Both the position numbers and the translations under genes were made by a program. From the NCBI GenBank assembly GCA_965603825.1, contig CBFDEM010000015.1, positions 620,001 to 684,000 on the forward strand: 64,000 nucleotides of DNA, read 5' to 3'. This DNA is from Blepharisma stoltei ATCC 30299. Taxonomy: Eukaryota > Protista > Ciliophora. Numbering within the stretch: the stretch's first letter is position 1; each line of letters starts with the position of its first letter. Below the pieces are notes generated by a model that saw nothing but the letters and a program-made list of their open reading frames with translations, had not been told where the DNA came from and searched no databases. This document shows positions 34,120 to 64,000 of this stretch, one piece after another.

Positions 34120-34368
34120 TTAAAACCCTCCTTTCATCTGCTGGAGCACACGAATGACGCAGTTATTAGTCAATCTTAATTGTTCCAAAGTAGCAGCTCC
34201 TTGAGTGCCTATACTTAAATACTTATTCCCAAAAATCACACTTAATTCACCTTGGCCAAACATCTGTTGAAATTGGTTGTGAAGCTGAGCATAAGTTCAC
34301 GAGCTGTTTACTTGCAATGTGCGTTGTTGCCCGTTCATATCCTCTACTCTTATCGTCAAGTTCGACAT
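34120..34368 (-). CDS. Divergent mono-ubiquitin-like modifier, 82 aa, ending QMKGG-F (absent from the ORF track)
   Basis: Hand translation MSNLTIRVEDMNGQQRTLQVNSS-W(TGA)-TYAQL...TLEQLRLTNNCVIRVLQQMKGGF*. Beta-grasp pattern; clear paralog of 50323-50868, whose aligned Trp is TGG. Confidence 0.88.
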
Positions 34369-35196
34369 TTATAATTATAAGAAATGGAAATTTGTGTAGA
34401 TTCTCAGGTGATTTTATAAAGTAAATAATGAAATGATAAAATAGCTATTAAAATGAGATTTAAAGAAAGAAAACTGCAAGGATATTCTTTAATTACGTTG
34501 CATATATGATAGAAAATATTATTTTTAGAAATTTTATCTGAAATTATGCTGAGTTTTATTTTATTTTGATGTTTAATAATTTTGCCTTGGGTATAATAAT
34601 TTTATCTATTAAACAATGGGAAATCTTATTTAATAATGCTATAAAGTAATGAAAACAATTGATTTTGCTTGAGATGTTCTATAACTTTTGTGAAATCAAA
34701 ATTTTAAAATTTAGAATTAATTCTTATCAATAATATTTTTGGCAATTAAAAATTAAGAAATGCTTAAGCTATATTTCTTCTCTTACATTTATATCTGCAC
34801 TATTAATTTTATAAGGAAAATAATACAAGGCTTCATGCTGAATATTATTAGCTATAGGCTTGGTCAGATGCTAGTTAGGGGGGAACATTATATATAGTGT
34901 TTTAGGCGTTTTATTTATTTTAGTTATAATAAATTAATAAATTTCTTATCTTTATCTCAGTGAGAAGTAAAGTACTTTAAAATCATAATACATATTATTT
35001 TATATTATTTGACTTTGTAAAATGATAGGGTGCTAGGTTCATTCCTTTTATGACTGATTTCTTCAAGTCTAAGAACAGATAGACTTTTATTTGCTAACTA
35101 GTTTCTCTAAATCCTTAAAGGCTCAATTTTCATTTAAAAAATGCGGTAAACTTTATTTCAATGCTTTATAAAAATTTATAGATTCCATATTAATAA

Positions 35197-37990
35197 ATGG
35201 TGCAAAGACAAGATGTTGAAACCTATACCTTAGCTCAAGTAATTCATGCGCTCCGAGCAATTCAAGGGCATTGCAATATACTAGAAGAAGGTTCTACTCC
35301 TTTGCACGATAAGTTAATAAGGCAAAATTCTGATGAAAATTTAGATAATGACCTTCTAAATGAACTTACAAGCAGCATCCCAGTCAAAGCAATCCCATAT
35401 TCATTTATTGAGCTGTTAATCTTAATCTGAAATTCAGTAAATCCACAAAATCAAATATCCCAAGAAAATGATTCGGTCTTTATTTTTTATAAAAAATATA
35501 AATGATTGAATAAATTTTTGGAAGACAGAGAACTTAATGATATTTTCTTTATAGTTGGCAAGCGTCTATGCAAAACTGACTGAAATATTAAAGGCAAAAC
35601 CTACAAATGTTTATTTTTTAAACATAAAAATACCCAAAAATTTACTGTCAAAAGAAATAATTCAGAGCAAGAATACTTCTATAAATTTGGTGAGAGCAAT
35701 GAAGATTTATATGTTTCTGGGTACATAAATTCTGAGGTGCTCAATCAGAAATGCTCAATTTTACAAATTCCTATTAAAAGCAGTGAGATCAAGAGCAGAA
35801 AAGAAATAAATTATCTACTGATCTCTGATAACCAAAAATTATGAAGCTCTTGCTACCTTAATTCTCTTCTAAAAACACTTGTATACAATGATAAATTTTA
35901 CCAAAAAATCCAGACAGTGAAGTACCCATTATTTTTTGGTTTATCATCAGTATTGCTAGCTATTAAAGAATCTAAGCCACATTATAAAATTTATAAGCTT
36001 ACAAACTTACTTAAAAATCAATTAAAAGCTGAATTCCCTTGAGTAATTTTTTATATAGATTGAAAATTTCACCCAGCAAGAATGCAAAGAATTAATGATG
36101 GAGTTAATAGGCAGACTTTCAGAATTTACTGAAATAGATTCATTATTTGCAATTACAAATGAGCAAGCCTTAAATTTCAAGGAAAAAGGTGAGTATCGTT
36201 TTCTCAGCATAGCACCTCTTCCAGAAAAAGATGAAGAAAAGTGTTTTTGGGAGCAAATAATATATAAAGTGGCGCCTTTTATTAAATTCAATAGATTAAG
36301 CAAAGAGAAACCATATGCTTATTTTGAAAAAAATGAGGCAACTGCTTATTATTTGGCAGCAATTTTTACTGAAAATGAACAGAAATGAATTTATTGCAAT
36401 TCCTGCAATCAATGGATAAACATCAGTATAAATCCAAAAAACAAAGAAAAAATAATATTCAGTGAAGGAGCTGCATATTTTTATATAAAAATAAATAAAA
36501 AAGATTTTGAAAAAGATAAAGTTAGTAAGCAACTTTCGCTTGAATGGGAAAGAAGGAAATATAAACAAAAAAAATTGCCAGAGATATATAAATCCACAGA
36601 AAAAACCAAAAAAATTGAAATTGAAAAATTGAAAAATATTGAAATTCAGCAAAAAATCCAAAATAGCGAAGATATTATAAATAATTATCAGCTAGAGAGA
36701 TTGAATAATCAAGAAATAACAAATAATCGAAAAGAATTAATGGCTGAAAAAGATGAAAATGGTGAAAAAATGCAAAAAGATAATAGGATTCAGCGAAAAT
36801 TACAATGGAAATTAATAACTCTTAAAGAATTGATATTTGAAAACGAAATTCTAGAGAAAAGATGCATAAACTACGAAAACAAAGCTGAATTACTAGAGAA
36901 AGAAAATCAAACATATAAAGCTCAGAATGAAGTCTTAAATCAAGAAAAAGAAATTTATAAAGCTCAAAATGAATTTTTAAATCAAGAAAACCAAACTTAT
37001 AAAGCTCAGAATGAAGTCTTAAATCAAGAAAAAGAAACTTATAAAGCTCAAAATGAAGTCTTAAATCAAGAAAACCAAACTTATAAAACTCAACTAAAAT
37101 CATTAACTGAAGAAATAAAAAAGCTAAGAGAAAATAAGATCCTAAATTATCCATTAATTTTTGACAGAAAAAAAGCAGGGATTCCTAATATCGGGAATAC
37201 ATGCTATCTTAATTCACTCTTACAAGTGTTTGCAAGCAATAATGAATTTTGTGAGAAAATTCGACCACTAACATATGAATTATTCTCTACTTTGTCATCA
37301 CTATTAGTGAGTATTAGAGATCCCACAACTAATACAATCTGAGAGTTCGTGATGGCTTTTAAAAGTAGATTTAATGATGAATTTCCATGGGTAATCTTTA
37401 TATAGCTTGGCGATTTAACCCAGCAAGATTCTAAAGAAGTGTTGCTAATGCTAATAGGGAGATTATCAGATTTTACTAATATTGAACCTTTGTTTATAAT
37501 TTCATATAAACAGATATTAAATTGCCATGATTGCAATTATAAAGCAAAGGCGACTGAAACAAACACTTTTATTACAGTTCCCATTAACAAATTCAGTTCT
37601 ATACAAGAATTTATAACGGATATAAAAAAGCCAAAAAAATTCATTGGTGATGGAAGCCAATTATATTGCGAAAAATGCAATAAGCAGCAAGATATGACGG
37701 TTGAATATGAAGAAATTATATGGCCATCTACAGTTACCTTTTATTTATCCTCAAAGAATGGCAGAATTAGAATTAATAAAGAATTAGATATTGAAGGAAC
37801 TATTTATAGATGGTACGGATTAATATGCCATTATGGGGATTCATGATCTGGGCATTATTTGGCATATACATGGGATACTAACAATTGGACTGAATATAAT
37901 GATAGCAAGACAGCAAATCGCTGCAGCCGCAGCATTGATGTGGCAAATGGATATTTAGCCTTTTATGCAAGGGCAGGAAATCCCAAATAA
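35197..37990 (+). CDS. Multi-domain USP: divergent N-domain + degenerate USP + 14-aa repeat coil + intact USP, ~920 aa
   Basis: Open with TGA=W and introns at 36043-36058 (16 nt) and 37391-37405 (15 nt). First USP: SCYLNSLL/QQECKE with no recognisable His box. Second USP: GIPNIGNTCYLNS, QQDSKE, SGHY, YND. Confidence 0.82.
36902..37092 (+). repeat. 42-bp coding tandem repeat (~4.5 copies, ENQTYKAQNEVLNQ)
   Basis: TATAAAGCTCA(G/A)AATGAA...TTAAATCAAGAAAA recurs with a 42-nt period. Confidence 0.9.
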
Positions 37991-38803: not shown

Positions 38804-40399
38804 CTATGAGCTTATAAAAAATGCAAGATAGCACGAACTGAAATCTGGCTGCCAAATCTTCGAGTTATTATCTAAATATTCTCTCCATGTGCATCCATCT
38901 TTTGTATATGCGGCATATTTCTTCGTGTTTTCTATCTGGTAAAGGCATTTGATTGCTCCATATATTTCATATTTTGATCCCATATAATTAAATTCTTCAG
39001 GGAGAATATATTGATTTCCTATTGGCAATTCTAATATTAAAAATGATCCCACTTCAATGGATTCTACTGTATTGCTCATCAATTTAGTTTGATTGCAAAT
39101 ACTACAAAAATCTTCATTTCAGGTACTTGTTTTTATATTTTGATCGATTTCTTCATGAATTGGTTTATTTGCAAAATTCATGAATTCAATAACATTTATA
39201 TAGTCCAGTTTTATATGCTCATGCCCAACTTCACAGTTAACTCTTGTTGTCAATATAGTTGAAAATAATTTTTGATTTGGATAATATTCATAAAGCTTAT
39301 TTATAAGCCAGTTTATCACATTTTTAGGGTCTTTTTCAAAGTTAGTCTATATAAAATTTACATAATAAGAGTTCTGTATTAAAGTTATGTTAAAATCTGA
39401 TAGTAAATTATCAACGAAATTTTGGAAATTTGACCTTTTCATAGTGTGAAATAAAATGTTTAAGCTCACTAGTGTTGGGTCTATTATACTTTTTGATAAT
39501 TCAATAAATAAAGATGTGCTGGCAAGAATCTGTAACGCCGAAGTGAGGTAGGAATTATCATTTATATCAGAAAATCCATGTTTTTGGTCAGGAAGAAGTG
39601 AAATCATTGAGGTAAATAAACTACCATTTCCTACAGTTAGGTAAGCTTGGCTTGAGTTGAGGTGCTGATTTTCAGGTTGAAAGGTATAATAATTCCTTGC
39701 TGGCTCATAATAAGCACTTCTTGATAAATTTAAATTACTTGCAACAGGCTCCTCATTTCTGCTTACTTGCCTTGAATTTTCAATAATTTGACTGAGTCTT
39801 CTTACCTCATGTTTTAACTCAGCTACGTTTTTTTCTAAGTCTTTTATTTTGGCATTATTTCCACTATTAATTTCTACTGTCCTCTCATTTCCTAAATTTA
39901 GCCCGCTCAGCACACAGCTATTGGCAATATCCCCGTAATTAATATATTCACTTATAAAGCTTTCAAGCTGTATTTGGACATCGTTAGGATCATTAAGCAA
40001 CAGGATTTTTAGCAATGCGTCTTCTTCATTTGTCCTTATTTCTTTTGTTGTTATAATTTTTCTTATATATTTGTCAATTATTCTGATTCCTGAGTCTAAC
40101 GATTTTAACCCATTTTTATTGATTTCTTCGAGGTTTTTCATATTTGTAGAAACCTCTGAGGAGAATTGTAATTTAATATTTTGGAGTTTTGATTTTTCTT
40201 CTTGAAAAGATTTCAGAATACTTATTATTGTGGGCTTAGCAGGTTTACGATATAGATATTCAAACCTATGAGTTAAAGAGTTAGAGGCGGAGTGAGATTT
40301 TTTATGTAGTTTGCAAAATACTAACTTTTGATCTTGTCAGTCGCACATGTACTTAGGTTTTCCATCGCATGATGGGAAGCTACAAATATTGTAGTTCAT
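38804..40399 (-). CDS. Catalytically dead pseudo-USP with N-terminal Cys/His (B-box-like) motif, ~526 aa
   Basis: ATG 40399; 15-nt intron at 39347-39361; TGA=W at 40337 and 39119. Cys box reads GFSDINDNSYLTSALQ (C>S); His box reads TKKYAAY (H>K). Confidence 0.78.
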
Positions 40400-41030: not shown

Positions 41031-41876
41031 ATGGGTCCCTGTCTTGGCAGAAATGATCATCAAAGCGAACAGCAAAAAGGAATTCCAAATATTGGAAATA
41101 CTTGCTACATGAATTCTGTCATTCAAGTATTAGCAGCGACTCCGAACTTTTTAGCAAATTTGGATAGTGTCAAACAAGCTGAGTTAATTGCTTTGAAAAA
41201 TTTTATACAAGGAGTGAAATTAAGATATCCCTCATCAAGCTTATCAATTTTGGCCAATGATTTTAAAAATCAAATTTCTCAAGCACATCCAATTGTAATT
41301 ATAAAATAGTTTCAAGGGTCTAGAGAAAATGACGCAAAAGAATTATTTGCCATTATATTATCCATTCTAGGTGAAGAGGAAACGGTAACAAACCCATTCA
41401 ATATAGTTTTCAAAAGATCATTTAAGTGTGAAGAAAAGAACCATATTGCTTATTCTGAAGAAAAATCAAATTTAATTATTATTCCAAAAGGAGCTAGCAT
41501 TGAAAATCACCTGAAAAATATGGATAGTGAAAAGAAGTTCTGAGGAGATAACCAACTCTATTGTGAAAAATGCAAAAAAACTAAAGATATAACTATGAAA
41601 ACAGAAAGAATTGAATTACCAGAGATTTTAGTCCTTTACACTCCAAAGGATGGAAATTCAAAAAATAATACTAAATGCCTTAATGAAGTTATTTTAGAGC
41701 AGAAATCGTACATACTTTATGCTGTTATATGCTATAACTCATGGCCTCGACATTATTATGCATATACAAGAATCTCAGAAAAATCTTGGCGCAAATATAA
41801 TGATGATCGTACAAGTGAGTCAAATAGTTTACCCGAAAAAAATGCATATCTTTTGTTCTATAAGTCTAATTATTAA
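41031..41876 (+). CDS. Minimal USP-family peptidase, 276 aa, N-terminus MGPC
   Basis: GIPNIGNTCYMNS; intron 41295-41309; ENDAKE; CEKC; RHYYAY; WRKYNDD; AYLLFY. Confidence 0.9.
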
Positions 41877-42317: not shown

Positions 42318-43364
42318 ATGGAAGTCAATATTAAAAAAGCAGCTGAAACATTTTTGAGTTTCTATCTAGCATGCTTATTCTGGCTGATTGCGACTTGTGT
42401 ATGATATCTTTATTGCTTATGAGAAATATTTTATAGGCTCTTACATTTGGCTTTTAAAAAATTTCCACATTATGTAATGATCTTTATAGGATGCTTATTT
42501 TCTTGTTTTAGATGTAAAAGAAAAGCAAAAAGAAAAAATCAAAATTCTTACAGCATGCCCGAGCAATATAGGAAACAAGGGATTCCAAATTATGGAAGCA
42601 CCTGCTATTTAAATTCAATAATACAGATATTGTCTAGTACGAATGAGTTTGCTAGTTCAATAAAAAATTGTTTTGGGCTATCAGATATTTTTGACGATTT
42701 GAGATCTCCAAATCATGATTTTGAGCCTAAAATACAGAATTTCTTATTAAAGCTAAGCAAGGAGCACGAAATGGTAATTTTAGTTCAGTTTTCTTTGGGA
42801 AAGCAAAATGATTGTAAAGAGCTCTACAATATTCTTATTGAAACTCTTGCAAAAGAAAACTCAGATGCAGAGAATTTCTTTAAGATTGTTAAATACCAAA
42901 AAATAATATGCAGCATGAACCATAATCAAGAAAAACCTGAGACTTCTTATTTTCTTCTTTATCCAAAAAGCGCTAATTCGAGCTTAGGCTCATATTTAAA
43001 AGACTTAAAAGATAAAGCAGATGAATTTAATGAGAATAATCCTTTATTTTGCGAAAAATGCAATTGCTTAAGAGCTACAACAATTAAGATCGTTTCTTTA
43101 GAGCTGCCACAAATATTGGCAGTCTATTTACCAGGGAAACCATTTAAAAGCATAAAATCAGTAGAAAGTATTAATTTTGAAGGAAAATATTATGAGCTCT
43201 ATGGAGTAATTTGCTATTTTGAGCATAAATATTCTAGCCATTATATAGCATGCACACTAGATGAAGATGGCAAGTGGAGAGAGTATAACGATGCTTTTGC
43301 TACAGAGAAATGCCCAGATATGAAGAATGCTTATATGCTGTTTTATAGGGTTAAAAGCAAATAG
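42318..43364 (+). CDS. USP-family peptidase with hydrophobic/Cys-rich N-terminal anchor, ~343 aa
   Basis: ATG 42318, with two TGA=W in the hydrophobic leader; GIPNYGSTCYLNS; stop-free in-frame intron 42774-42788; QNDCKE; SHYIA; YND. Confidence 0.88.
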
Positions 43365-43907: not shown

Positions 43908-44984
43908 ATGCAGCAAGAAGAAAAAGAAGGCGAAAGAAGTCAAAATCGCAGTTTTAAATTTTATTTATATCTCTTATACATATTATCACAACTGGGCAGC
44001 TATTGCAGCTTGATTTATGGTGCAATAGCCAGATATTGCGAAGGGATATGCGATTTCATAATATGACTAATATGCTGCAAGATTAGGGATCATAAAAAGT
44101 TTGAATGAGATAACCAAATAGAAAATCCAAACTATTTCAGCCAAGAGGAAATCGTAAATTACCCCGGAATAAAAGAAAATTATTCCAGAAAATTAGGAAT
44201 CCCGAATTTTGGGAACACTTGCTACTTGAACTCAGTTTTACAAATTTTAGCAAGCACCCCAGAATTTTCTAAATGCTTAAATCCAGATTTTGAGCTTTCA
44301 GGAACTTTATTAACCATTATCAAAATGATAAATAAATACTCAGACACTAATTTTCAGCCAGAAATAAACAGCCTTTTAAAGATCATTCAGCAATCATATT
44401 CAGACGTATTTTCTAAATAGTTTACTTTAGGCAGACAAAATGACAGTAAAGAAATATTTGTAATTATAATCGATAAATGCTCAGAAATTAATGAAAATTT
44501 GAAGGATTTATTTTTTATTAGAAAAGATGAAACAATTATTTGTGAAAATGGACATATAGAAAAAAAAGAAGAGGTGGAAACACTTTTATTAATCCCTCAA
44601 AATTTCAATAAAGATATTAGTGGCTTTATAGATATTTTAGAGCAGAAAAGCGATTTTAGTGGGGAAAATAAGTTATACTGCAGCACCTGCAACAGTTTAA
44701 AGGACGCTAGTATTACCTCAAAATATAAGCTGCCAAAATTTTTAGTTTTTTATTTTCCTGGTGAAAATCCGAAGAAAAGGAATATTAAGGAATCTGAGAC
44801 ATTTAAAGATAAAGAATATGAACTTTATGGAATAATTTCTTTTTATCCGTCTTACCGACATTATATAGCTTTTACGTTAGATGGTGGAATATGGAGAGAG
44901 TATAATGATATATCAGTGACTGAAAAGAAGCCTGATTATTATTATACTTATATGGCGTTTTATAGACATGCAGAGAAATTATAA
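43908..44984 (+). CDS. USP-family peptidase with hydrophobic/Cys-rich N-terminus, ~353 aa
   Basis: ATG 43908; GIPNFGNTCYLNS; intron 44406-44420; QNDSKE; RHYIAF; WREYND. Confidence 0.88.
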
Positions 44985-45412: not shown

Positions 45413-46147
45413 CTATAATTTAAGCAAAATAAAGCCTCCATTAAAACAGTCTAACACTATCAGCTTAGAATTAGCTGAAATTCCTAGTGCTTCTAGTGTT
45501 GAACTCCCGTTCTCAGGAACTCGAAGTGTTTTTGACCCAAGTATACAGACTATTCCCCTCTTTCCAAGCTTATCGCGAATATTTCTCTCCAACGTTTCAA
45601 AAGTGTCAGTCTTTTTGGTATTAAAAATAATAAATCCGTCTTCAAACTCAATCATAATTCTTATTTCATCTTTACTCACTCTCACAGAAGTTGAACTAGT
45701 AAAATCTAAATCTTTTAAGGAATAGTTTTCTTCTGTTGCCAAATCAAGTCTCTTTTTGTAATTTCTGATAATAACTTCTTTATGCATTTCGATGTCTTGG
45801 CTAATGTTAAATTTAGCTTTCACTAAATTGGTGAACTCAGAAAGCTTCATATCGCTGCTTCTTATTTCAAGAACCTCTTTTCTATCTCCATATTCTACAG
45901 AGATATACAAATCAGGGATAATTTCAATATCTAAGCAGCTGTTGTTCATAATTTTTAATTCAAGGAGAGATTTTTCGCCATCACGGTTGAAATTGAGGTA
46001 GTTTGGATTTTTGAGGATTTTGAGATCATTAGTCAGGGAAAGGGCAGCTTGGATATTTTGATAGAGCTCAGAAAATTTCATATCAGCTGAGGCTTCAACT
46101 ACAAAGTTTTCTCCTCCAATTACCTGAATTATAATCCTTAAAGACAT
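45413..46147 (-). CDS. Tri-ubiquitin-like protein, 244 aa, ending CFNGG-FILLKL
   Basis: Three ~78-aa beta-grasp repeats (ending SLLELKIMNNSCL / SLKDLDFTSSTSV / TLEALGISANSKL); GG only after the last repeat. Confidence 0.8.
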   Translation of the reverse strand: MSLRIIIQVIGGENFVVEASADMKFSELYQNIQAALSLTNDLKILKNPNYLNFNRDGEKSLLELKIMNNSCLDIEIIPDLYISVEYGDRKEVLEIRSSDMKLSEFTNLVKAKFNISQDIEMHKEVIIRNYKKRLDLATEENYSLKDLDFTSSTSVRVSKDEIRIMIEFEDGFIIFNTKKTDTFETLERNIRDKLGKRGIVCILGSKTLRVPENGSSTLEALGISANSKLIVLDCFNGGFILLKL

Positions 46148-46614: not shown

Positions 46615-47055
46615 ATGGAAAGACTTCAAGCTGAGTTTAACGCAATTCAATCAGAAAGTCATCCAGAATACTCTGTTGAAATAGTCAATAACAATTTTTT
46701 CCACTGGAAAGGCACTCTTCAAGGACCTCAAGACACTCCTTACCAAAATGGAAAATTTAGGTTCGAAATTGTTTTCCCTCAAAGTTACCCCGCATCACCT
46801 CCTGAATTTTTTTTCAAAACAAAGATTTTTCATCCCAATATATACGAAGTCAACGGAGAAACTTGTGTGAGGGTTCTAAATATTTCTTATAATAGAAATA
46901 TCCCAGTTAGAATTATTATTGCTTATGTATTTGATCTGCTGGCGAATCCTAATCCTGATGCAGGGTATGTCCAAGACTCAACTCATGCTTATTTGTATAA
47001 TAGGCCAGGATATACATCTATGGCTGCTGAGTGGACAAGATTATATGCAATATAA
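46615..47055 (+). CDS. Divergent E2 ubiquitin-conjugating enzyme, 146 aa
   Basis: W.G.L.GP.DTPY..G.F, FP..YP..PP, FHPN, catalytic Cys (GETCVRVL), AAEWTRLYA. Confidence 0.93.
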   Translation: MERLQAEFNAIQSESHPEYSVEIVNNNFFHWKGTLQGPQDTPYQNGKFRFEIVFPQSYPASPPEFFFKTKIFHPNIYEVNGETCVRVLNISYNRNIPVRIIIAYVFDLLANPNPDAGYVQDSTHAYLYNRPGYTSMAAEWTRLYAI

Positions 47056-47183: not shown

Positions 47184-48608
47184 ATGAGCAAAAACTACAA
47201 TTTGAGCTATTCAAAAAATATATTATCACTTGCATGCAGTGCATTAAAGATTCTTAATCAATATAATTGCTTAGCCAACAATAAAACAAGCCTGTTTTAT
47301 AAGATAGTGAATTCAGATATAAATGACAGAAACCTGACAATTTTGAGTGATAGTCTTCCTAAAGATGGAAACAGTCCAAATATTTTTGAAGCTTTAAAGT
47401 TCCTATTATTATCAAAAGACTCTTTAGTTGCTGAAAAAGTCTATTTTTCTCGTAATATTTCATTTATTCGTGAGGAGGAAATATTTAATAAAAATAATGA
47501 CATAGTTATTATTTATGATCAACGGAGTCCAAGTATTGATAAAGATCATTATGAAAATTTGGGCTTTTGCTTGACTTTTTCAATTAACGTTAGTGAGACA
47601 ACAATGATAGATTACACTCAAGGAGTTAAAGAAGTTACTGAATGGAAATTTTATCAAAAATCACATCCTGGATATATTTATTGTTTTTGGCGAATAAATT
47701 CTCAGGCAAGTCAGCAGCAATTCAATGAAGAATCAAAGGAAATTATGCAAAGCCATTCTCCAAGAACTCTATCTCTAAACCTTCCCAATACACCCATTAA
47801 CCCAAATTATAAAGGACTTCCAAATTTAGGAAACACTTGCTACCTAAACTCAGTCCTACATATCCTAAAATGAACAGAAGGGTTCGCGTCATTGATTCAA
47901 TTATCTAGAACCCCCCCAATTCCACAATTATTTGCTGTTCTGTCTATTATGAACACCACTCAAGGCATAGAGAATCCCTTGAGAACTTTAATTTCCAGCT
48001 TAAACAAAACCTTTAAAGATGTAATTTTTAAATAGTTTCATATAAAAAAAAACCATGATGCTAAAGAGTTATTTACAGTTCTTATTGGCGAAATAGAAGA
48101 AAATATCACAAATCTCTTTTGTATAGTAGTGCATAAAACTCTGCATTGCCATCATAATGAGAGATATAGCATTGACCATGCAGAAGAAATAACCGAGAAA
48201 TTCCTGTTTTTATGTGTACCATATGGTGATGTTGAAAGCTATTTTATAAGGCTAGGAGAAGATCAATGATTTGAAGGGGAAAATTCTTTAAGGTGTAAAC
48301 GCTCAAATACCTTAAAAAGAGCTAGAATTTCGACTAATAAAATAGACTTTCCATCGAATTTGGCAATTTATGTGCCGCCATCAGAATCGAGGAATGAAAA
48401 TATTAAGACGAGTTTTATTCAAGAAGATAATCTATATCTCCTTTATGGAGTCATTGCGTACAATCCTTATATTCTTCATTATTTTAGTTATGTTTTGATC
48501 GAAAATAACTGGATAAAATTCGATGATGAAACTGTTACTTATGAAGCGCCAAGGCTTGATTTTGCTTACCTGTTGTTTTATAAAGCCACCTTTCTGCTAG
48601 CTGATTAA
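47184..48608 (+). CDS. USP-family peptidase with divergent N-terminal domain, ~469 aa
   Basis: GLPNLGNTCYLNS; TGA=W at 47871 and 48267; intron 48021-48035; NHDAKE; LHYFSY; WIKFDD. Confidence 0.85.
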
Positions 48609-50322: not shown

Positions 50323-50868
50323 TTAATTTTCGGATTTTATAAAACCTCCAACCATTTGCTTCATAACTTTAATGGTAGAGTTATTACCAATTCCTAATGT
50401 TTGCAGGTCTATTTCACCATTGCTGGTTAGAGAAAGGTACTTATTTCCTTTTATAATTGTCAATTCTTGGTTTCCAAAAATCTGCAAGAATCTTTCATAG
50501 AGGTGCTTAAATTGCAGATTTGGAGGAACTTGAATTGTCCTTTTAGTTCCTTCATTGTCTTCAATGACTATAGAAATTTGCTGAGGAGCTTGCACTGGAG
50601 GCTGTTCAGGAGCAGGTGGGTTGGGGTTTTGAGGCCTTTGAACACTAACAACGCGGATAACTGAATTATTGGTGATATTTAGTTGCTGCAGTGTGAGGTT
50701 TTGGGAGTTCGGACCGATGTATTTATTTCCATACATGACTGTGAGTTCGGTTCCACCAAACATAGTCTGCAGATGTCTAAGAAGCTCAGAATATTGCCAA
50801 TCACTCTTGCCTTGCAGAATTTTTGTTGTTCCGGTAGCATCTTCGATTCTTAAAGTAAGATTTGACAT
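50323..50868 (-). CDS. Di-ubiquitin-like protein with Pro-rich linker, 181 aa, ending QMVGG-FIKSEN
   Basis: Two mutually similar beta-grasp domains; paralog of the mono-Ubl at 34120. Confidence 0.88.
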   Translation of the reverse strand: MSNLTLRIEDATGTTKILQGKSDWQYSELLRHLQTMFGGTELTVMYGNKYIGPNSQNLTLQQLNITNNSVIRVVSVQRPQNPNPPAPEQPPVQAPQQISIVIEDNEGTKRTIQVPPNLQFKHLYERFLQIFGNQELTIIKGNKYLSLTSNGEIDLQTLGIGNNSTIKVMKQMVGGFIKSEN

Positions 50869-51129: not shown

Positions 51130-51720
51130 TTATATTTCTGTAAGACACCAAATAAAGGAGATTCCAATCAGGACTTCATCAATTGACCACTTAATCGTTA
51201 AATTCCTACCATAAGCCTTTTTTATCATCTTTAGCAAACGCTATAAAATGGTTTCCATAATAGAATATCGCTCCAAATATATTATATCTGAACGCTTCAC
51301 CACTGCAGCATACTTAATGACTCAGACAAATTTTTAGTAATCCCTCCAAATTTTTATAGCAATATTGAAGAATACCTTCGAAGCTACAAAACCCAGCAAT
51401 ATTCAGAAGCAATGATTTATTAAAATGTAACTTATGCGGCTCAAATTCGATTTCCATGATGAATGAGTCCTTATAAACAAGCCAACTTACTTGATATTGT
51501 CATTTCAAGGCATAGATGCTATAGTCAGACTTCCTAAAAGTTTGGATTTTGAAGAAATCGGTGCTCTCTGTTTGAGTTGTGTCTTATACAGTTCATGGGT
51601 CTTCTGGGCATTATACAACATACACAAAAGAAAATTACTCATCAATACATTATAATGATAAGCATATGCAAATATTGATTTTCAGAATGGAATTCCTAGG
51701 GTTTATTTAGTTTTTTATTT
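51130..51720 (-). pseudogene. Decayed USP relic
   Basis: LGIP remnant near 51700. His-box remnant YNIFGAIFYYGNHFIAFAKD followed, after a frameshift, by W*EFND* near 51200-51285. Confidence 0.55.
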
Positions 51721-51837: not shown

Positions 51838-52290
51838 TTATCCAAATGCATCTCTAAATGTTCTTTCTCTTGCTATATTGAATCATTCTTCTCTGCTTAT
51901 TAAGCAAATATCAGCTGCCTCACACATAAATCCATGCTCTGGCTCAGGCCTGTTCAGTAATTCGATGAGATAGTCAATGATAACCCTGGGATGGCAGTTT
52001 GGGTTTCACATATGGTTAAGCAGAGAATGACAAACTCTTCCATTGCTAGGGAAAATATTTGGATGGAATATGGGTGTCTGAAAATATACTTTGGGAGGCT
52101 TGCTTGGGTATTTTTTGGAAAATTTTATTAAAAATTCAAAAAGACCGCCTTCAAAAGCAGTGCCTTCAGGCCCATTGAGATTTCCGAGTCATTCATAGTA
52201 GTCTCCCTGGTGAGTATTCACAGAAACAAAAGGCTGAGGATTTGCTTGCAAATCATTCAGTTCAGTCATAAGTCGTTGCAACGCTGCCAT
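51838..52290 (-). CDS. Divergent E2 enzyme, 150 aa (absent from the ORF track)
   Basis: MAALQRLMTEL..YE-W(TGA)-LGNLNGPEGTAFEGG, YPSKPP, FHPN, GRVCHSLL, W(TGA)NP, NRPEPEHGF; TAA at 51838. Confidence 0.9.
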
Positions 52291-53935: not shown

Positions 53936-54499
53936 ATGCAGGGCAACGACAACTCAATGGTAACTATAACTTTAATCGACATCGATGGTCGGCCAGCAGA
54001 AAAAGAGATAAATCTTAATTGAACCTTCTCTTTATTGGCAAGACCTCTATTAAACGAATATGAAGCAGATAATCAAAGTCTCGCTCTGAATAATGGAACA
54101 CTTTTAAGGTTGGTAGATCATCAAAGCGAAAAACTTCGTGACTTAGGATTTGAGGGCGAAAAAGTAGTAAAAATAATGCATGCAAAAAAAGGCTGTCCAG
54201 ATATATCAGTTCGCGTTGAAAATTTGATAAACTCATCAAAATTTAGTGTTATGGTAAACCCTTTATCAAAATGTTTTGATGTCTGCCAAATGCTTGAAAC
54301 CAGGACTGGATTACGTCTATTAAATAATAGAGAAGCTTCTGTTATGGTGAAATCCGTTTATTTGAATTTTGAAAACAATTATTATAAAACGCTGAGAGAT
54401 TTAAAAATAAAGCACAATGAAAGTTTGAATATCTTGAAATTTGAGCGTGGAGGTCTTTATTGTGCAAAACGAATCAATTATTATAAAGCACCAAATTAA
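53936..54499 (+). CDS. Divergent di-ubiquitin-like protein, 187 aa, ending FERGG-LYCAKRINYYKAPN
   Basis: ATG 53936; TGA=W at 54020 in the same position as the other Ubls (INLN-W-TF); two beta-grasp units (KLRDLGFEG, TLRDLKIKHN). Confidence 0.78.
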
Positions 54500-54644
54500 A
54501 TGAAAAGAGAGTCGAATTGAATAATGATTAAACTTTTAGTAATTTTCTGATATATTTCTTATAAAATTCATGCTGAGTCTCAAAAATATGCCAAAAACAT
54601 ATATTTTAATTGTTTTCTTATTTAATTTCATGTATTAAGAAATT

Positions 54645-55265
54645 TTTGACCCAAGCATACAGTCTATTTTTCTTATTCCAAGCTTATTACGAATGCCTCT
54701 CTCTAACTTTTAAAAAGTATCAGTCTTTTTGGTATCAAAAACACGAACTTCTTCATTAAATCAAACATAATTCTTATTTCATCCTTAAGCACTCTCAGAG
54801 TAGCCGAACTAGTAAATCTAAAGCTTTTAAAGAAAAATTTCCTTGTGTTGCCAAATCTAGTCTCTTTTTGTAATCTCTGATAGTTTCTTCTTTCTAAATT
54901 CGATGTCTTGGTTAATTTTAAATTTAGTTTTCATTAAATTAGTGAACTCAGAAAGCTTCATATTGCTACTTCTTATTTCAAGAAATTTCTTCTATCTCCA
55001 TATACTACAGAGATATGCAAATCAGGGATAATTTTGACCTCTAAGCAGCTGCTGTTCATGATTTTAAATCAAAGAGAGATTTTTCGCCATCAAGGTTGAA
55101 ATTGAGGTAGGTTGCATTTTTGAGATTAGTGAGGATTTTGAGATCATTAGTCAGGGAAAGGGCAGCTTGTATATTGTAATAGAGCTCAAAAAATATCATA
55201 CTGGCTGAGGCTTTAACTACAAAGTTTTCTCCTCCAATTACATGAATTCTAATCCTTATGGACAT
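54645..55265 (-). pseudogene. Frameshifted, 3'-truncated copy of the tri-Ubl at 45413
   Basis: Close nucleotide match to 45530-46147 with several indels; the GG end is lost. Confidence 0.88.
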
Positions 55266-56203
55266 TTTATCGCTAAATCTATAAATTTTTATTAAATATG
55301 AAATTTTGCTTTTTATATATTTTATTATAAAAATTTTAGACCTAATAAGGAGATCTGTTAATTAGAATTTTATAGCAGCTTGCAAAGATCACAAACTGGA
55401 AGAGAATGTAGTAATTTATATCTAATTTCTTGTTAAATTTTGCTATCTCAAGAGATGTAATGAATTTTTATATATATTATATCCTGAATGAGGGATTTTT
55501 ATTTGCTATCTTGATTATTTCTTCTACTTTAAGTGGAAATATTTATCTTTTCGCATAACCTGTAGAGTGCAGAGAACAATTTGTCTTGAATAAATAAATA
55601 TAGAGAATTTGCCAAATTACTCTTGCAGGTTTAAATTTCAAATAATATAATTAGCATACGATATAGCTCGCTATCAACTGCTAATTCAAGTTTTGGTAAA
55701 TGATTGAGTTTATAGTGGCTTAGCTATAATTTATAATCTAAGCTCTTCAGCATTATCATTTATGGCTAAAAATATCTTCAAAATATCATATTTTTAACCT
55801 GAATAAATTTCTTTATTAGAGAAATAAAATATTTCATATTTTCGACTTAATTTTTTAAACTACTGCAAGTATATGATGCATCAGATTTAAATACTTATTT
55901 CATAAAACAAGAATAATTTCTTCATGATTATTATTTAATTACAAAATTCAAATAAAAAGCTAGATTAGAAAATGCCTAAAATTTATAAATTGCTTAAAGC
56001 AGCAATGAATATAAATTTTTTCTTTATAGAAATTACCTTTCATATCCATATAATCTTATATGTATTTTATCACTTTATATAAATATTTTGGAAATAAAAG
56101 ATAGATCTTCAATGAAATTTTGGGTTCTCATTGTAAGCTTATTAAGAAAATATAATAAAATCTCAAAATTAGATATTTTAATAATTTAATAACATCTGTA
56201 GAA

Positions 56204-56618
56204 ATGGAAAGACTTCAAGCTGAGCTTAACGCAATTCAATTGGAAAGTCATTCAGAATACTCTTTGAAATAGTTAATAACAATTTTTTCCACTGGAAAGG
56301 CACTCTTCAAGGGCCTCAAGACACTCCTTACCAAAATGGAAAATTTAGGTTCGAAATTGTTTTCCTCAAAATTACCCTGCATCACCTCCTGATTTTTTTC
56401 AAAACAAAGATTTTTCATCCCAATATATACGAAGTCAACGGAGAAACTTGTGTGAGGGTTCTAAATATTTCTTATAATAGAAATATCCCAGCTAGAATTA
56501 TTATTGCTTATGTATTTGATCTGCTGGCCAATCCTAATTCTGATGCAGGGTATGTCCAAGATTCAACTCATGCTTATTTGTATAATAGGCCAGGATATAC
56601 ATCTATGGCTACTGAGTG
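56204..56618 (+). pseudogene. Frameshifted copy of the E2 at 46615
   Basis: Near-identical to 46615-47032, with 1-nt deletions at about 56263, 56365 and 56392 and a truncated 3' end. Confidence 0.9.
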
Positions 56619-56882
56619 TTCGATCCTCCTTATCTTAAGAAGAAAAAGCTTATAATAGAAGTATATTTTTAAGGATTTTATAAAAATTATTTTTAATAAT
56701 AAAAAAATTTTCTAAATAGGACTACATTGCATTTTTAGAAATTGTAATATTTTCCTGCTGAAGTTTTATCTTAAACTCAATAATCATTTTCCAAGAATTT
56801 AAACAAACTTTGCAAAGACATAATAATTCATTATTTGCTTAATGATAAATTTCCTAACCAAATCCAATTTAAAAATCCAAAA

Positions 56883-58775
56883 TTAATTTTTATTTTTATA
56901 GAAAAGCATATAAGCGCATCTAAAATTCGGCTTATCAGCAAAAGAAACCATCGAATCGTTATACTCAACTCATGAATTTTCAGCCTCACAATAAGTATAA
57001 GCAAAATAGTGCCCAGACAAATTGGTCCCAATATGACAGATAACTCCATAAAGTCTATAATTGTTGTTTTCAATTGTTATATTGTCTTCTGGAATAAAAG
57101 AGGTTGGTGCCGGAGTCAAATAGAAAACTAAATTAGCTCGGGTCTCAATAGAAGTTGTCTCAATTGTCATATCTCTCAAGCAGTCACATTTGTCACAATA
57201 AAGAGCATTCGCACCTTGAAATCTCTCTGGATTCTTTAATCCATCTATATAGCTTTGGATACTCCTTATCCTATTTGTAGGTACCACAAAAAACGAGGAG
57301 CTTTCTTCTGGAGAGCCTGCATCATGCCCTCTACAAATAAACCTTTTAACTCTTTTTATCAAAAACAAGTCGAAATTAGGCTTTTCGTCAGCGACTTTTG
57401 AGATGATAATTTGGAAAAGCTCTTTAGAGTCATTTTGGGTGCATCCTTGGAACTAAATAAAGGCTACCATTGAGAATTCTGAGCTTAATTCATTTTTGAA
57501 TTGGGAAATAGCAGAGGCTAAATTGCCTGATTTTGATTTCATTAGCTTAAAGATATTAGAAAGATATGTGAAAAAAGGTTGATTTATCCAGGCTACTATA
57601 CCTTCAAAACCTTCAGTGCTAACTAGAATTTGCAATACAGAATTCATATAGCAAGTATTTCCAATATTAGGTAGGCCGCTATTGCAGTTCGCCAGAGATT
57701 TAGGTTTTGGGGTACACACGATGCCATATGCGTAAGAATTATCAGTTCTTTTGATATCATATGCCGCATTATAGGGGTGAACTATGTTTTTTCTATCATC
57801 TTCAAAGCGATTTCTTCGACTTCTCTCATTTCCGATTTCGCTAATATTGCTCCCAATCGACTTTTGGACAATACTCTCCGTCTTATTCTCTTTTGAAGCT
57901 TGGAAATTTTGTAAACTTCAAGCAGGCACAGGATTTGCTTGAGAGTTCTGATATTTGTCTTCTCGGTAATGCAGGTCCTTATTTCTTCCCCAATTATCTT
58001 GAACTGGGCTAGGACTTTTGTAAATACTATAGATAGCATCATACTGAGAATTCTGAGGATTCTTTACATGATCGAAGTTTTGATTTTCGCTCTTTGGTAC
58101 TCTATTAAGATTACGGCTTTGTCTCTCATCTTGATCTTGGGTTTTATTTCCAAATGTATAACTTACGTCATAATGTCTTTTATCTGTATAATGAACATTT
58201 AAATTAGTATCTTTTAGCGCTACATCTCGGGTGACCCTTGAATTGATCTTAATATTTTGGTTTGTAATTTTTAATTTTTCTTCGTTCTGGTTTGGCTTTT
58301 GTTGAGGTGCTTGAATAGTCTTTGAAGATCCAGAACTTTGTTTTGGTTCTTGTGGCTTTGATGGCGTGCTTACAACTTTGCTAATTCCACTTCGACTTTC
58401 AGGCTTGCTTACGCCAGCATTGCTAGAATTTCTTGAGTTTGCATTAGATGACAATTTATTGCTATAGATGATACTTCTTGCTTTATCTTCATTTCCTTTT
58501 TTCCCTGAACTTTGACTTAGTTCTTGCGGTTTTGGTGGCGTGCTTAAAACTCTGTTATTTCCACTTCGACTTTCAGGCTTGCCTAAACCAGTATTGCTTG
58601 AATTTCTTAAGTTTGCATTAGTTGACAATTTGTTGCTATATGAGATACTTCTTGCTTCACCTTCATTTATTTTTTTCTCTGTTATAGATTGGGTTTTTGG
58701 ATTAATTGGTCTTCTTGGAATATCAGCATTCAAATAATTATGATTGCCTTTGACCGGACCTGGAAATTTTCTCAT
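56883..58775 (-). CDS. USP-family peptidase with long disordered, internally repeated N-terminus, ~625 aa
   Basis: ORFs 57918, 57453 and 56970 share a frame; TGA=W at 57918 and 56970; intron 57453-57467; GLPNIGNTCYMNS; QNDSKE; SGHYFAY. Confidence 0.87.
58340..58670 (-). repeat. Two-copy ~59-aa coding repeat in the USP N-terminus
   Basis: NEGEARSISYSNKLSTNAN..KPESRSG..STPPKPQE versus NEDKARSIIYSNKLSSNAN..KPESRSG..STPSKPQE. Confidence 0.85.
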
Positions 58776-59636: not shown

Positions 59637-60575
59637 ATGATGATATTAAATTTTCTTAGGAAGATTTTTGGCTACTTTTTCGATTCTCCAAGGCCTATAA
59701 TAAGTATACAAAATTTACCAACTCTAAGTATTGTTCCTGAAAAAAAGCTAGTATTTCCTATTTGAGCATCCCAGCCAGATGGCATAAAATCTCATAAACA
59801 GGGACTCCCTAATGTTGGGAATACCTGTTATTTAAATGCTCTTCTACAAGTATTATCAAGCACTCCAGATTTTGTTCAAAAATTACCTTCAAATTCAAAA
59901 ATATGTGTTTCACTGTCAAGAGTTATATCATGAGTCCAACAGAAAGGCAGACTTTCAATTTTCGCTGAAATAAAAAAGCTTCAGCTATATTTATTTCAAG
60001 AATTCCGCATGGTAATAAATACGTAGTTTAACGAGCACTCAGAAAATGACCCAAAAGAGCTTTACTTATCATTAATGGGCCTTTTGCCAGATTCAAGCGA
60101 TTTCTCTATAATTTTATATAAGAAAATTCTATGCAAACTATGCCACAATTTTTCAAATTTAGAAGAGCCATCTCTCTTTTGCATTCTAAAAAATCCATCA
60201 AAAAAAGAAATTGAAGAGAAATTAAAAAATCTCGAAGAAGAAAAAGAGTATAAAGGGGGAAATTTATTGTATTGTGAAAATTGCTCGGCAAACAGGGAAA
60301 TGGTAATGAGCACCTTTGGCATAAATATACCAAACATTTTTGTATTTTATATTGGGAATGTGTTGGGCAAAAGAGCTCAAGGAGCTTATAATTTCTTTTA
60401 TTGTGGTGATAAATTTGAGCTATATGGGGTAATATGCTATTATAATAGTGGGTGTAGGCATTATATTGCATATACATTAGATAATGCAGAGTGAATGCAA
60501 TATAATGATGACCATATTAGCTACTCATCACCTGATTTTGAGCATGCTTATATGTTATTTTACAAAAAGACATAG
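59637..60575 (+). CDS. Minimal USP-family peptidase, ~307 aa
   Basis: ATG 59637; GLPNVGNTCYLNA; intron 60012-60026; ENDPKE; CENC; RHYIAY; W(TGA)MQYNDD; TAG at 60573. Confidence 0.87.
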
Positions 60576-61010: not shown

Positions 61011-61019
61011 AGCAATGAT

Positions 61020-61751
61020 AGGTTTACAAATTTCGTGAGGAGCATAGACAGCCACTCTTTTGCAGTGGCTTTATATGGAGTTTATAATATTATGAGAGAA
61101 AAAGAGATATCGAGCAGAATTTAAGGATTTTTAAAGATCAAGCTAACCAAAAATTTTCATTCGTAAGCTCTATGCAGCTTGATACATTTGGCCACCAAGA
61201 TTCAAAAGAGTTTTTAGTGTGCCTTTTATCAACATTAGAAGAGCTTTCTAGCGTAAGTTTGTCAAATATCACTCCAATTCAAGAGTCTATATGCATGAGT
61301 TGTATAAAGTCCCTACCATAATCAAGAAAATCAAAGCTTTTTTACGATTCCAAATAACCAAAAATCAAATCAGATGCATTTAAGAGACTTCAATGCAAGG
61401 TATAGAATTTTAGAGGAGATAATATACTCCATTGTCAATTTTGTGAATCTCTGAGGAATATAAGTATTAAAACTAAGAGAATTTTATTCTGAAATGCTAA
61501 TTTTTTATCTGCCAGCTTATAAAAATTTTCCTAATGCCAAAATTGAGGGAAAACTGAAGTTAGAAGAGTATGAATTCAGTCTCTATGGTTTTATATGAAG
61601 CTATGGCTCTGGAAATATTGGGCATTATACAACTCATATTAAAGATGGGAATGTTTGGAGATTATATAATGACTCAACTGTAAGTGATAAAAGCTATGAT
61701 GCAGGAAATAGCTATTTAGTTTTTTATTTATTAAATAAGTCGAGGACTTAA
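61020..61751 (+). pseudogene. USP pseudogene
   Basis: Eroded Cys box, conserved intron 61163-61177, HQDSKE, CQFC, IGHYTT, WRLYND, SYLVFY; internal frameshifts and stops. Confidence 0.8.
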
Positions 61752-61945
61752 AAAATCCATAAATAATTTCAGTTAATTTTGTATCGTATAATGTAAATTT
61801 TCTTTTATTTCAATTATAAAAGAATTAACTTAAATTAACAGGATATATCCTTTGCGAATTAGAAAAATAAATACTCATGCGCAAGGTTTAGCATATAACT
61901 ATTTATTGAAATCTAGTTCCATTATTAAAATTTATAGAAATCAAA

Positions 61946-62386
61946 ATGCAACGACTTATGGACGAGTTTATCAATCTGCAAGACAGACCAGAACCTTATA
62001 TCACTATAAACATAATAAATCACTCATTTTACAACTGAAAAGGAACACTTAATGGCCCTGATGGAACCCCATACGAAGGTGGCCTATTCGAGTTCGAAAT
62101 TACATTTCCACCAAATTTCCCAACAAGTCCTCCTGAATTTCTTTTTAAGACGCCAATTTTTCATCCAAACATTAGATCTGATGGGCACGTTTGTTGTGAA
62201 ATCTTTTCAAATGCCTGAAACCCAAAAGTCCCTGTTAGAAACATCATTTCGTATGCAGTAGGATTATTAAATGAGCCTGAACCAAGAGCAGGATACCAAG
62301 GACCTGCCACAGAATTATGCTTGAAGAATCGAGAAGATTTTAATAGGGAAGCAAGAAGATGGACTTTTGAGCATGCAATGGGGTAA
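61946..62386 (+). CDS. Divergent E2 enzyme, 146 aa (absent from the ORF track)
   Basis: MQRLMDEF..N-W(TGA)-KGTLNGPDGTPYEGG, FHPNIRSDGHVCCEIF, W(TGA)NP, EPEPRAGY, RWTFEHAMG*. Confidence 0.92.
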
Positions 62387-63303
62387 AAGGACAATTAAGA
62401 TAATAAATTCTAGTAAATCTTAAGAATTTTTAATTATCATTTTAAAATGTTTAGTAAGAGGTCTTAAGGTTATATAAATTGCAAAATACGAATACAGTGC
62501 AAAACGTATCACTGTTTTGAAAGACGATAAGTGATTAACTAAAAGCATTAAACTTATAAAATTAGAGTAAAAGAGTCCAGCACAGATAGTAAGATTTACA
62601 TATATTTCTGCAAGAGCATTGCTTGTCTTGGTCGGATAAGATATTAAATATGAGCATCTGATCTTTAATCATATATTCAAAATTTAATTATATCAATGAT
62701 AAAGGTAATTAGAATTGGCCTATATAATAAGAATGAATAAAACTTATTTAGATTTTTACTCCTTAATATATTGCTTTAGAAAACCGTATATTGATTAAGT
62801 TCTTATTTTGTTAGGCATAATCTAATAATTTGAAATCAGCTAGAGAAATTGGAGTTGCAAATACTGGGTCCCTTAAGTTTGCGAATGCCTACTATATTTG
62901 GAATTTTCATATTGTCTATCGTTCATCAGCTAAAAGTTAAAGCCAATTCTCAGGCACAGCTAAAGTCAAATAATTGTATATGCTATAAAGGGCACAATTT
63001 CTAAACTAAACCCTAATTCTAAATTTAATTACTGATTCTATATCATTCAAAAATATATAATTTTTATCAATCAAAGCTGATTGGCAAGCCACTTAAAATG
63101 CATCCATAGCTTAGACTTAGAAAGAAATCCTGTGCTTCTTGAGGGCTTTAGTCAAGAGAAGTTATCTAAAATGAAATTTGTAGAGTTCAGAAAGTCTTTT
63201 CAGAAAATCAGATTTGACAGTGAATCTTAATGTAAATATAAGCATAAATCAAAGCAATATTATGCTAAAATAAATTATAGAATCATAATTATTTCCTTAG
63301 AAA

Positions 63304-64000
63304 ATGTCTGACGCACGAGTTTGAAAATTTTGCATCGCAGTCAATCTCACTTATTCCCTTAAACAATTTATCAATTTCGAAACCAATCTGTTGCTGTCTG
63401 AAACCTTAAATCAGGTACTAAATTCCTTACAATGAGATGAACAAAATCAAAGGGAGCTAGCCTTTTTACGAGATGAGCTAGACCAAGTTTTAATAGATAA
63501 TAGCTGAACTATTTCATGCATTGAAAAAGATCTTATTGATTTACCATTACAACAAAAGATCTTCTGTGCTGCTGATAAAATAATGATTTTAAAAGATCTT
63601 CCATCGAGAATTTGCTCAATTAAAATAAAAGAAAATGAAAATAGCTATTTTCTTGTCGCAGCGCTTTTAGAAAATGGCAAAGCACTTTATCATTGGAAAG
63701 ATGAAGATTGATACAAAATTGGGTTTGATAAGTCCATGCCTGATGAACCGCATTATTTTTACTTTTGCGAGGCTCCTCTACATGATATAGAGCGGATTTT
63801 AAACTCTAAATGCTATGAAAAAATATATTCGCTGCTTAGAGACTCGCATACCGAAAATGAGTCTCTACTAGATATTAGTGAAGCATCTGAAATAAACCAA
63901 AGAGCTAGCATAGATGAAAGTAAAGAAAGCAATGAAATTATTGAAAAAGGGGTAAAAGATACAAAAAATCAAGAATTACAAACTGAAATTGACAATGAGC
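63304..64000 (+). CDS. 5' part of a gene running off the window; N-domain resembles the degenerate USP-like N-domains of the island
   Basis: ATG 63304, open to the window end with TGA=W. SYFLVAALLE...W...HYFYF resembles YYLAAIF (36340) and YSLVSAISF..W (49780). Confidence 0.65.

What the first reader, a model, noticed from the sequence alone, without database searches (positions are those of the whole stretch)
34120..64000. A >=30-kb island of Ubl modifiers, E2 enzymes and minimal USPs: candidate dedicated Ubl conjugation system
Seen: after the LINE, essentially every recognisable gene belongs to one of three families. There are 4 intact Ubls plus 1 pseudogene, 4 intact E2s plus 2 pseudogenes, and 9 full-length USP genes plus relics, interleaved on both strands. 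Paralogs are highly divergent and many copies are dead. Known: a modifier with its own E2 and deconjugase is the logic of ISG15/UBE2L6/USP18 and of bacterial antiviral Ubl-E1-E2-peptidase operons. Eukaryotic ubiquitin-pathway genes are normally scattered. Inference: this is a physically clustered, birth-and-death evolving, non-ubiquitin tagging system, plausibly for defence or stress response. I do not know of a description in ciliates, but I cannot search.
Basis: partly seen in the sequence, partly recalled or inferred. Interest (0 to 1): 0.95.

Follow-up and report, generated by a model that had tools for sequence, protein, structure and literature searches.

The report
Clustered ciliate ubiquitin-like tagging system
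The ciliate Blepharisma keeps, side by side in its genome, what looks like a complete private protein-tagging kit (its own ubiquitin-like tags plus activating, conjugating and removing enzymes), and rumen ciliates carry a similar kit on single mini-chromosomes, an operon-like arrangement I found no description of in eukaryotes.

Summary
Observation confirmed and extended. The window is Blepharisma stoltei macronuclear DNA (C15:620001-684000). The island holds 4 intact Ubls, 4 intact E2s and 9 full-length USPs plus relics. Related clusters occur on at least six other contigs; 16 of 17 Ubl hits lie near an island-type USP (0.64% of the genome). The pathway's specificity surfaces changed together: the E1 lost a crossover-loop Asp invariant in 117/117 UBA1s and the Ubls lack Arg72; the E1 lost UFD acidic residues and 0/10 island E2s keep the basic helix-A motif. 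All four families show dN/dS below 1. Telomere-capped 8-10 kb rumen-ciliate contigs encode only E1 + E2 + GG-ended Ubl + 2-4 USPs; their E1 arose separately from UBA1 (AU p=5e-5). Best reading: a dedicated non-ubiquitin conjugation system (0.8). Defence is untested; there are no expression or biochemical data, and no E3 or target.

The parts
34120..34368 (-). Single-domain Ubl, 82 aa, ends GG-F; residue 72 is Gln
35197..36267 (+). Degenerate USP copy (Cys box altered, broken)
36095..37990 (+). USP, 626 aa, coiled-coil N-terminus with 42-bp repeats; Cys and His present; 15-nt intron
38804..40399 (-). Full-length pseudo-USP, 526 aa, no catalytic Cys or His, Cys/His-rich N-terminus; paralog on C18 with dN/dS 0.34
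41031..41876 (+). Minimal USP, 276 aa, essentially the catalytic domain alone
42318..43364 (+). USP with hydrophobic (membrane-like) N-terminus
43908..44984 (+). USP, 353 aa, hydrophobic N-terminus
45413..46147 (-). Three-domain Ubl, 244 aa, ends GG plus 6 residues; residue 72 is Cys
46615..47055 (+). E2, 146 aa, HPN and catalytic Cys intact
47184..48608 (+). USP, 469 aa
48742..50238 (-). USP; N-terminal part weakly resembles a second degenerate USP domain
50323..50868 (-). Two-domain Ubl, 181 aa, ends GG plus 6 residues; residue 72 is Gln; folds like di-ubiquitin/ISG15
51137..51286 (-). USP relic
51838..52290 (-). E2, 150 aa
52857..53336 (-). E2, 159 aa
53429..53599 (+). USP relic, 91% DNA identity to the 42318 gene
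53936..54499 (+). Two-domain Ubl, ends GG plus 14 residues; residue 72 is Phe
54644..55271 (-). Pseudogene copy of the three-domain Ubl (83% DNA identity)
56195..56637 (+). Broken copy of the 46615 E2 (95% DNA identity)
56883..58775 (-). USP, 625 aa, low-complexity N-terminus
59637..60575 (+). USP, 307 aa
60669..61003 (+). E2 pseudogene
61091..61748 (+). USP pseudogene
61946..62386 (+). E2, 146 aa
63304..64000 (+). 5' part of a 635-aa USP. Beyond the window, in extended coordinates: USP end 65226, E2 65271-65708 (-), UBA1-derived E1 66031-69084 (+; C15:686031-689084), USP 69218-71248 (+), telomeric repeats by 72057

Best explanation
The island is most of a self-contained ubiquitin-like conjugation pathway, insulated from ubiquitin. 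Proposed cycle: (1) Ubl precursors end GG plus 1-14 residues (shown) and are trimmed by cluster USPs (inferred). (2) The cluster E1, a fast-evolved UBA1 duplicate with intact ATP motifs, catalytic Cys and UFD (shown), adenylates and charges the Ubls rather than ubiquitin (inferred from the altered Arg72 pocket). (3) It passes them to cluster E2s through a remodelled UFD/helix-A interface (changes shown on both sides; exclusivity inferred). (4) The E2s, which lost the usual E3-binding and lysine-activating residues (shown), tag unknown targets without a canonical RING E3 or through an unlinked one (inferred). (5) Diverse compact USPs remove or edit the tags (inferred). The module is copied, shuffled and lost at several loci. 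A parallel module exists in rumen ciliates. The most likely role is biological conflict such as anti-parasite defence (about 0.45 given the pathway), by analogy only.
For: E1 adjacent to the island and two more in the C11 cluster. Island E1s form one clade with a long stem inside heterotrich UBA1, 48% identical to housekeeping UBA1, against 69% between Blepharisma and Stentor UBA1. Asp at human position 623 is invariant in 117/117 homologs but Q/W/Q in island E1s; no intact C15, C11 or C18 Ubl aligned has Arg72; PMC12355090 names Arg72 and the crossover-loop pocket as the specificity filter. UFD Glu (E/D in 98/117) and Asp (75/117) are replaced, and the (K/R)RxxK/R motif is complete in 0/10 island E2s versus 40/51 homologs, p=4e-6, and 59/80 viral E2s. 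dN/dS 0.17-0.28 for E1, 0.16-0.30 E2, 0.19-0.45 Ubl, 0.34-0.54 USP. The Ubl family was found only in B. stoltei among 1.84 billion representatives. The same four gene classes alone fill telomere-capped rumen-ciliate contigs, reassembled in many samples. Housekeeping UBA1s are not clustered.
Against: The E1 keeps Gln608, Tyr618, Asp620 and Glu626 equivalents, and UBA6 shows one E1 can charge both ubiquitin and a Ubl. USPs keep the D-x-x-E box that contacts the ubiquitin tail (role from my own knowledge). No E3 or target found. Of two C11 E1s, one lacks the catalytic Cys and one has a frame break. Some clusters show no E1 or E2 hits (C12; C8 has only an E1 relic). Paralog dN/dS reflects history, not present function. 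Blepharisma housekeeping E2s and USPs were not in the trees.
Confidence: 0.8

Rival explanations
1. Expanded ubiquitin enzymes: the E1, E2s and USPs still work with canonical ubiquitin (or are dual-specific like UBA6), and the Ubls are non-conjugated adaptors or decoys.
For: Part of the Arg72 pocket and the USP D-x-x-E box are retained; the C18 cluster begins beside a canonical polyubiquitin gene; the C18 three-domain Ubl and one other paralog end in GC, not GG.
Against: Complementary losses on E1, E2 and Ubl; GG is kept in all four divergent window Ubls; a GG-ended Ubl sits between or beside E1 and E2 on four rumen chromosomes.
Confidence: 0.1
2. Decaying relic: the pathway once worked but is no longer active, and the arrays are a by-product of tandem duplication in unstable regions.
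For: Many pseudogenes; both C11 E1s are damaged; LINE at the left border; GC 30% against 35% in the flanking housekeeping region.
Against: C15 holds an intact set of all four parts; dN/dS stays below 1 in recent pairs with dS about 0.2-0.35.
Confidence: 0.1
3. On role rather than chemistry: a poison-antidote or self/non-self module, in which Ubl tagging is harmful and the large excess of diverse USPs acts as an immunity array. Linkage would keep writer and eraser together. Compatible with the best explanation.
For: About 10 USPs per E1 on C15; USP and Ubl arrays without E1 or E2 elsewhere; writer and erasers share one chromosome in rumen ciliates.
Against: No direct evidence; USPs are needed anyway to mature the precursors.
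Confidence: 0.2
4. On role: a developmental or stress pathway (conjugation, encystment, macronuclear development) rather than defence. Compatible with the best explanation.
For: Ubl pathways such as SUMO act in development (own knowledge); public conjugation time-course RNA-seq exists (PMC9942806) but could not be read here.
Against: Rapid turnover, narrow distribution and clustering are more typical of conflict systems (inference).
Confidence: 0.25

Closest known systems
ISG15 pathway (UBA7, UBE2L6, USP18) of vertebrates
   Same: UBA1-derived monomeric E1, dedicated E2, tandem beta-grasp modifier, USP-family eraser; the two-domain Ubl matches ISG15 structures.
   Different: ISG15 keeps LRLRGG (PMC12355090); these Ubls do not. 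The E1 is a separate ciliate UBA1 duplicate. Genes are clustered and multi-copy; no E3 seen. ISG15 genes are unlinked (own knowledge).
FAT10 / UBA6 / UBE2Z
   Same: Two-domain modifier with a non-Arg residue 72, activated by a UBA1-like E1 about 40% identical to UBA1 (PMC12355090).
   Different: FAT10 needs no maturation and is degraded with its target; these Ubls carry extensions and come with many USPs. The island E1 nests within ciliate UBA1s.
Bacterial Bil (ISG15-like) anti-phage operon
   Same: Linked Ubl, E1, E2 and deubiquitinase with no E3; conjugates Ubl to phage tail fibre (10.1101/2023.09.04.556158).
   Different: Bil uses a JAB/JAMM metallo-peptidase and a bacterial E1 (PMC11354881); here the parts are eukaryotic UBA1, UBE2D-like E2 and cysteine USPs. 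Analogous layout, not descent.
Caldiarchaeum subterraneum ubiquitin gene cluster
   Same: One cluster with Ubl, E1, E2 and DUB (PMC11354881).
   Different: It includes a RING E3 and an archaeal E1, and is the main pathway rather than an accessory paralogous one.
Canonical ubiquitin system of Blepharisma (UBA1 on C28, polyubiquitin genes, about 70 scattered USPs)
   Same: Source of the enzymes; same folds and catalytic residues.
   Different: Scattered and conserved; keeps the crossover-loop Asp, UFD acids and Arg72.

Membership tests
Canonical E1-E2 Ubl conjugation pathway | Beta-grasp modifier with C-terminal GG (or GG plus extension) | tested here: met
Canonical E1-E2 Ubl conjugation pathway | E1 with ThiF x2, FCCH, 4HB, SCCH with catalytic Cys, UFD | tested here: met
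   (all five Pfam domains over cut-off)
Canonical E1-E2 Ubl conjugation pathway | E2 with HPN and catalytic Cys | tested here: met
   10/10
Canonical E1-E2 Ubl conjugation pathway | Protease with catalytic Cys, His, Asp/Asn | tested here: met
   8 of 9 full-length window USPs
Canonical E1-E2 Ubl conjugation pathway | Thioester formation and conjugation to a target | not testable with these tools
   needs biochemistry
Canonical E1-E2 Ubl conjugation pathway | E3 ligase | tested here: inconclusive
   none seen among ORFs of C15, C11, C18 clusters or rumen chromosomes; an unlinked E3 was not searched
Housekeeping ubiquitin system | Modifier with LRLRGG tail and high identity to ubiquitin | tested here: not met
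   12-26% identity, no Arg72
Housekeeping ubiquitin system | UBA1 crossover-loop Asp and UFD acidic patch; E2 helix-A basic motif | tested here: not met
ISG15 pathway | Orthology to UBA7, UBE2L6, USP18; LRLRGG tail | tested here: not met
   E1 nests in heterotrich UBA1 (UBA7 itself not in the tree, but it scores below UBA1 and UBA6); tail differs
ISG15 pathway | Induction by infection | not testable with these tools
Bacterial Bil system | Linked Ubl, E1, E2, DUB | tested here: met
Bacterial Bil system | JAB/JAMM peptidase and bacterial-type E1/E2 | tested here: not met
   peptidases are USP/UCH; E1 is UBA1-type

The most novel reading that the evidence does not exclude
Ciliates have at least twice built operon-like, ubiquitin-independent tagging pathways by duplicating UBA1 and co-adapting an E2, a Ubl and USP erasers, and use them as an E3-independent innate defence or poison-antidote system, a unicellular-eukaryote counterpart of ISG15 and bacterial Bil.
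Probability: 0.4. Interest if true: 0.95.

Novelty: new variant of a known kind. Interest (0 to 1): 0.88.

Why it matters
Eukaryotic Ubl pathways are a short list (eight E1s in humans, PMC11354881), and the ones born by UBA1 duplication (UBA6, UBA7) are known from animals and relatives. A clustered pathway with its own E1, several E2s, several modifiers and many erasers in a protist, plus a parallel module in a distant ciliate class, would show that new Ubl pathways arise repeatedly and can be found by gene neighbourhood as in bacteria. It gives a small, directly testable set (five genes on one rumen-ciliate chromosome) for asking how an E1-E2-Ubl triad becomes orthogonal to ubiquitin, and a lead on how ciliates defend themselves.

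Tried and rejected
Standard and TAR=Gln codes were set aside: UGA=Trp gives coherent genes and matches PMC9942806. Viral or prokaryotic origin is not supported: no viral relatives of the Ubl or E1; 80 viral E2 loci keep the canonical residues and have no E1 or USP neighbours; island genes carry 15-nt introns. A single origin of Blepharisma and rumen E1s was rejected. A single origin of the two E2 groups is neither shown nor rejected (p-AU 0.46; support 44). The single-sequence USP fold failed (pLDDT 41) and was not used. The Ubl profile found nothing in metagenome contigs. Paper searches found no description; the library is partial. As a precaution I kept that stretch out of later search queries, with one lapse: P0178, sent by id, proved to be the 53936 Ubl. 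Spliced USP models were built and compared only inside scripts; searches used single exons by reference.
Full report
Source. The window is G000:C15:620001-684000 of a 41.46-Mb, 64-contig assembly. Its proteins are named Blepharisma stoltei in NCBI. UGA=Trp, 15-16-nt introns, CCCTAACA telomeres and 64 contigs match the published macronuclear genome (PMC9942806). The left half holds ordinary genes and a LINE; GC falls from 35% to 30% in the island.

Observation. Eight USPs have Cys and His boxes; 38804-40399 has neither. Catalytic domains are about 260 aa and 24-42% identical; E2s are 36-48% identical. The Ubls miss Pfam cut-offs but fold as beta-grasp domains. All their domains score with one profile better than ubiquitin does, and that profile finds only B. 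stoltei proteins among 1.84 billion representatives.

The missing E1. A ThiF search of the genome found a 1017-aa UBA1-type E1 two kilobases past the window, between an E2 and a USP, followed by telomeric repeats. The end of C11 is a second complete cluster: two E1s, three E2s, three USPs and Ubls. C18 has Ubls, E2s and USPs. By coordinates, C8, C9, C12 and C55 hold USP and Ubl neighbours, C9 also an E2, and C8 an E1 relic. C35 ends in a copy of the C15 end, identical over the 7.7 kb compared. Sixteen of 17 Ubl hits lie within 6 kb of an island-type USP, 0.64% of the genome. Housekeeping USPs, ubiquitins and UBA1 are scattered. 'Subtelomeric' needs care: this genome has tens of thousands of alternative telomere sites and contig ends are not defined chromosome ends.

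Insulation from ubiquitin, shown in sequence. The three island E1s form one clade with a long stem inside heterotrich UBA1s. First interface: Arg72 of ubiquitin binds an acidic pocket of the E1 crossover loop (PMC12355090). The Asp at human position 623 is present in 117 of 117 homologs and is Gln, Trp, Gln in the island E1s. Residue 72 of the aligned Ubls is Gln, Cys, Gln, Phe, Lys or Gln. [quoted passage not shown] The motif is complete in 0 of 10 island E2s, 40 of 51 homologs and 59 of 80 viral E2s, and two usually acidic UFD positions are neutral in the island E1s. Third: island E2s all lack Phe62, Ala96 (9 of 10) and Asp87, mostly lack Asp117, and share a Gly-aromatic pair at 118-119. From my own knowledge these residues bind RING/HECT E3s and activate the acceptor lysine; UBE2L3 is the precedent for a cysteine-only E2 (PMC4822130). 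Against full exclusivity, Gln608, Tyr618, Asp620 and Glu626 equivalents remain.

Selection. Pairwise dN/dS between paralogs is 0.17-0.28 (E1), 0.16-0.30 (E2), 0.19-0.45 (Ubl) and 0.34-0.54 (USP), each significantly below 1; the E2-versus-pseudogene control is not significant. The catalytically dead USP has an intact paralog on C18 at 0.34, so it is probably a retained binder. Turnover is heavy: one C11 E1 lost its catalytic Cys and the other has a frame break before the UFD.

A parallel module in rumen ciliates. Scanning metagenomes with the island E1 returned seven loci. Four contigs of 7.9-10.3 kb, 20-22% GC, encode only a divergent E1, a divergent E2, one small GG-ended Ubl-like ORF and two to four USPs; a fifth shorter contig has E1 and the end of a USP. 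They carry CCCCAAT repeats at one or both ends, the telomere of rumen ciliates (10.1101/2022.01.05.474053); the species is not identified. The same gene orders recur in independent assemblies. The hits came from one shared 8-residue word, so the sample is not a census. These E1s also lost the crossover-loop Asp, their Ubls lack Arg72, and their E2s lack the full basic motif, Phe62, Asp87 and Asp117 and share the aromatic at 119 (14 of 14 module E2s against 5 of 131 others). Yet the rumen E1s group with a different set of canonical UBA1s, and a joint clade with the Blepharisma E1s is rejected (p-AU 5e-5; quick LG+G4 tree, AT-rich composition is a caveat). Eight conserved columns changed in both groups (p=0.005). 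The two Ubl sets show no sequence similarity; the E2s may or may not share an origin. Either the module arose twice, or an old module had its E1 redrawn from UBA1. Canonical UBA1s of Stentor and of the rumen E1s' sister group sit among unrelated genes.

Mechanism and role. Shown: all four parts, catalytic residues, linkage, co-changed interfaces, purifying selection, recurrence. Inferred: USP trimming of precursors, Ubl-specific activation and transfer, E3-independent or special-E3 conjugation, removal by USPs. I put the dedicated pathway at 0.8, ubiquitin-using enzymes at 0.1 and a dead relic at 0.1. Given the pathway, defence is the leading role (about 0.45), then development or stress, then poison-antidote; none was tested.

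Comparison and novelty. It works like ISG15/UBA7 or FAT10/UBA6 and is laid out like bacterial Bil, but is a member of none. I found no description in the searchable literature. Other readers in this scan noted the Blepharisma clusters, the E1 and its altered pocket; I had reached those points beforehand and count the notes as no added evidence. Limits on genome letters and reads are listed under Tried and rejected. Verdict: real, a new variant of a known kind, interest 0.88.

Noticed in passing
L017, L019, L020, L021 (also L024-L029, L032, L120-L122): Rumen-ciliate-type telomere-capped contigs encoding only E1, E2, Ubl and 2-4 USPs; deserves its own study.
   Followed up: yes
L020:266-3232 and L021:254-3385: These two rumen E1s have no Pfam UFD, and their partner E2s have also lost Arg5 of helix A, suggesting UFD-independent E2 loading.
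   Followed up: partly
G000:C55:255878-258751: A further divergent UBA1-like E1 (45% to the island E1, 40% to housekeeping UBA1) with no island-type neighbours detected; sequence not read.
   Followed up: partly
G000:C63:377313-378890 and C8:225731-226007: E1 relics; the C8 one lies in the USP/Ubl array and is 57-63% identical to the island E1.
   Followed up: partly
L007 (C11:1175847-1178870): Full-length E1 with the catalytic Cys replaced and the crossover loop altered, 87% identical to the C15 E1.
   Followed up: partly
L009:1031-1957 (C18:546031-546957): Canonical polyubiquitin gene at the edge of the C18 cluster; its fourth unit is diverged and lacks GG.
   Followed up: partly
G000:C35 about 754000-780130: Copy of the C15 end, 100% identical over 7.7 kb compared; recent duplication or assembly join. 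C35:720-750 kb does not match the window.
   Followed up: partly
window 28981-33701: LINE with endonuclease-like and reverse-transcriptase frames, split by frameshifts, at the island's left border; such elements are known in this macronucleus (PMC9942856).
   Followed up: partly
G000:C2:464666, C17:158871, C1:219960: Solitary island-like E2s (C2, C17) and a Ubl (C1) with no island-type USP nearby.
   Followed up: no
L010-L011 (C18:564085-568934): Tandem paralogs with kelch-like repeats next to the C18 cluster; identity from my reading only.
   Followed up: no
window 287-2125 and 18137-20308: Two genes resembling cytosolic carboxypeptidases (tubulin deglutamylases), recognised by eye.
   Followed up: no
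window 22879-23315 and 23990-24428: Direct repeat of about 440 bp at 67% identity.
   Followed up: no
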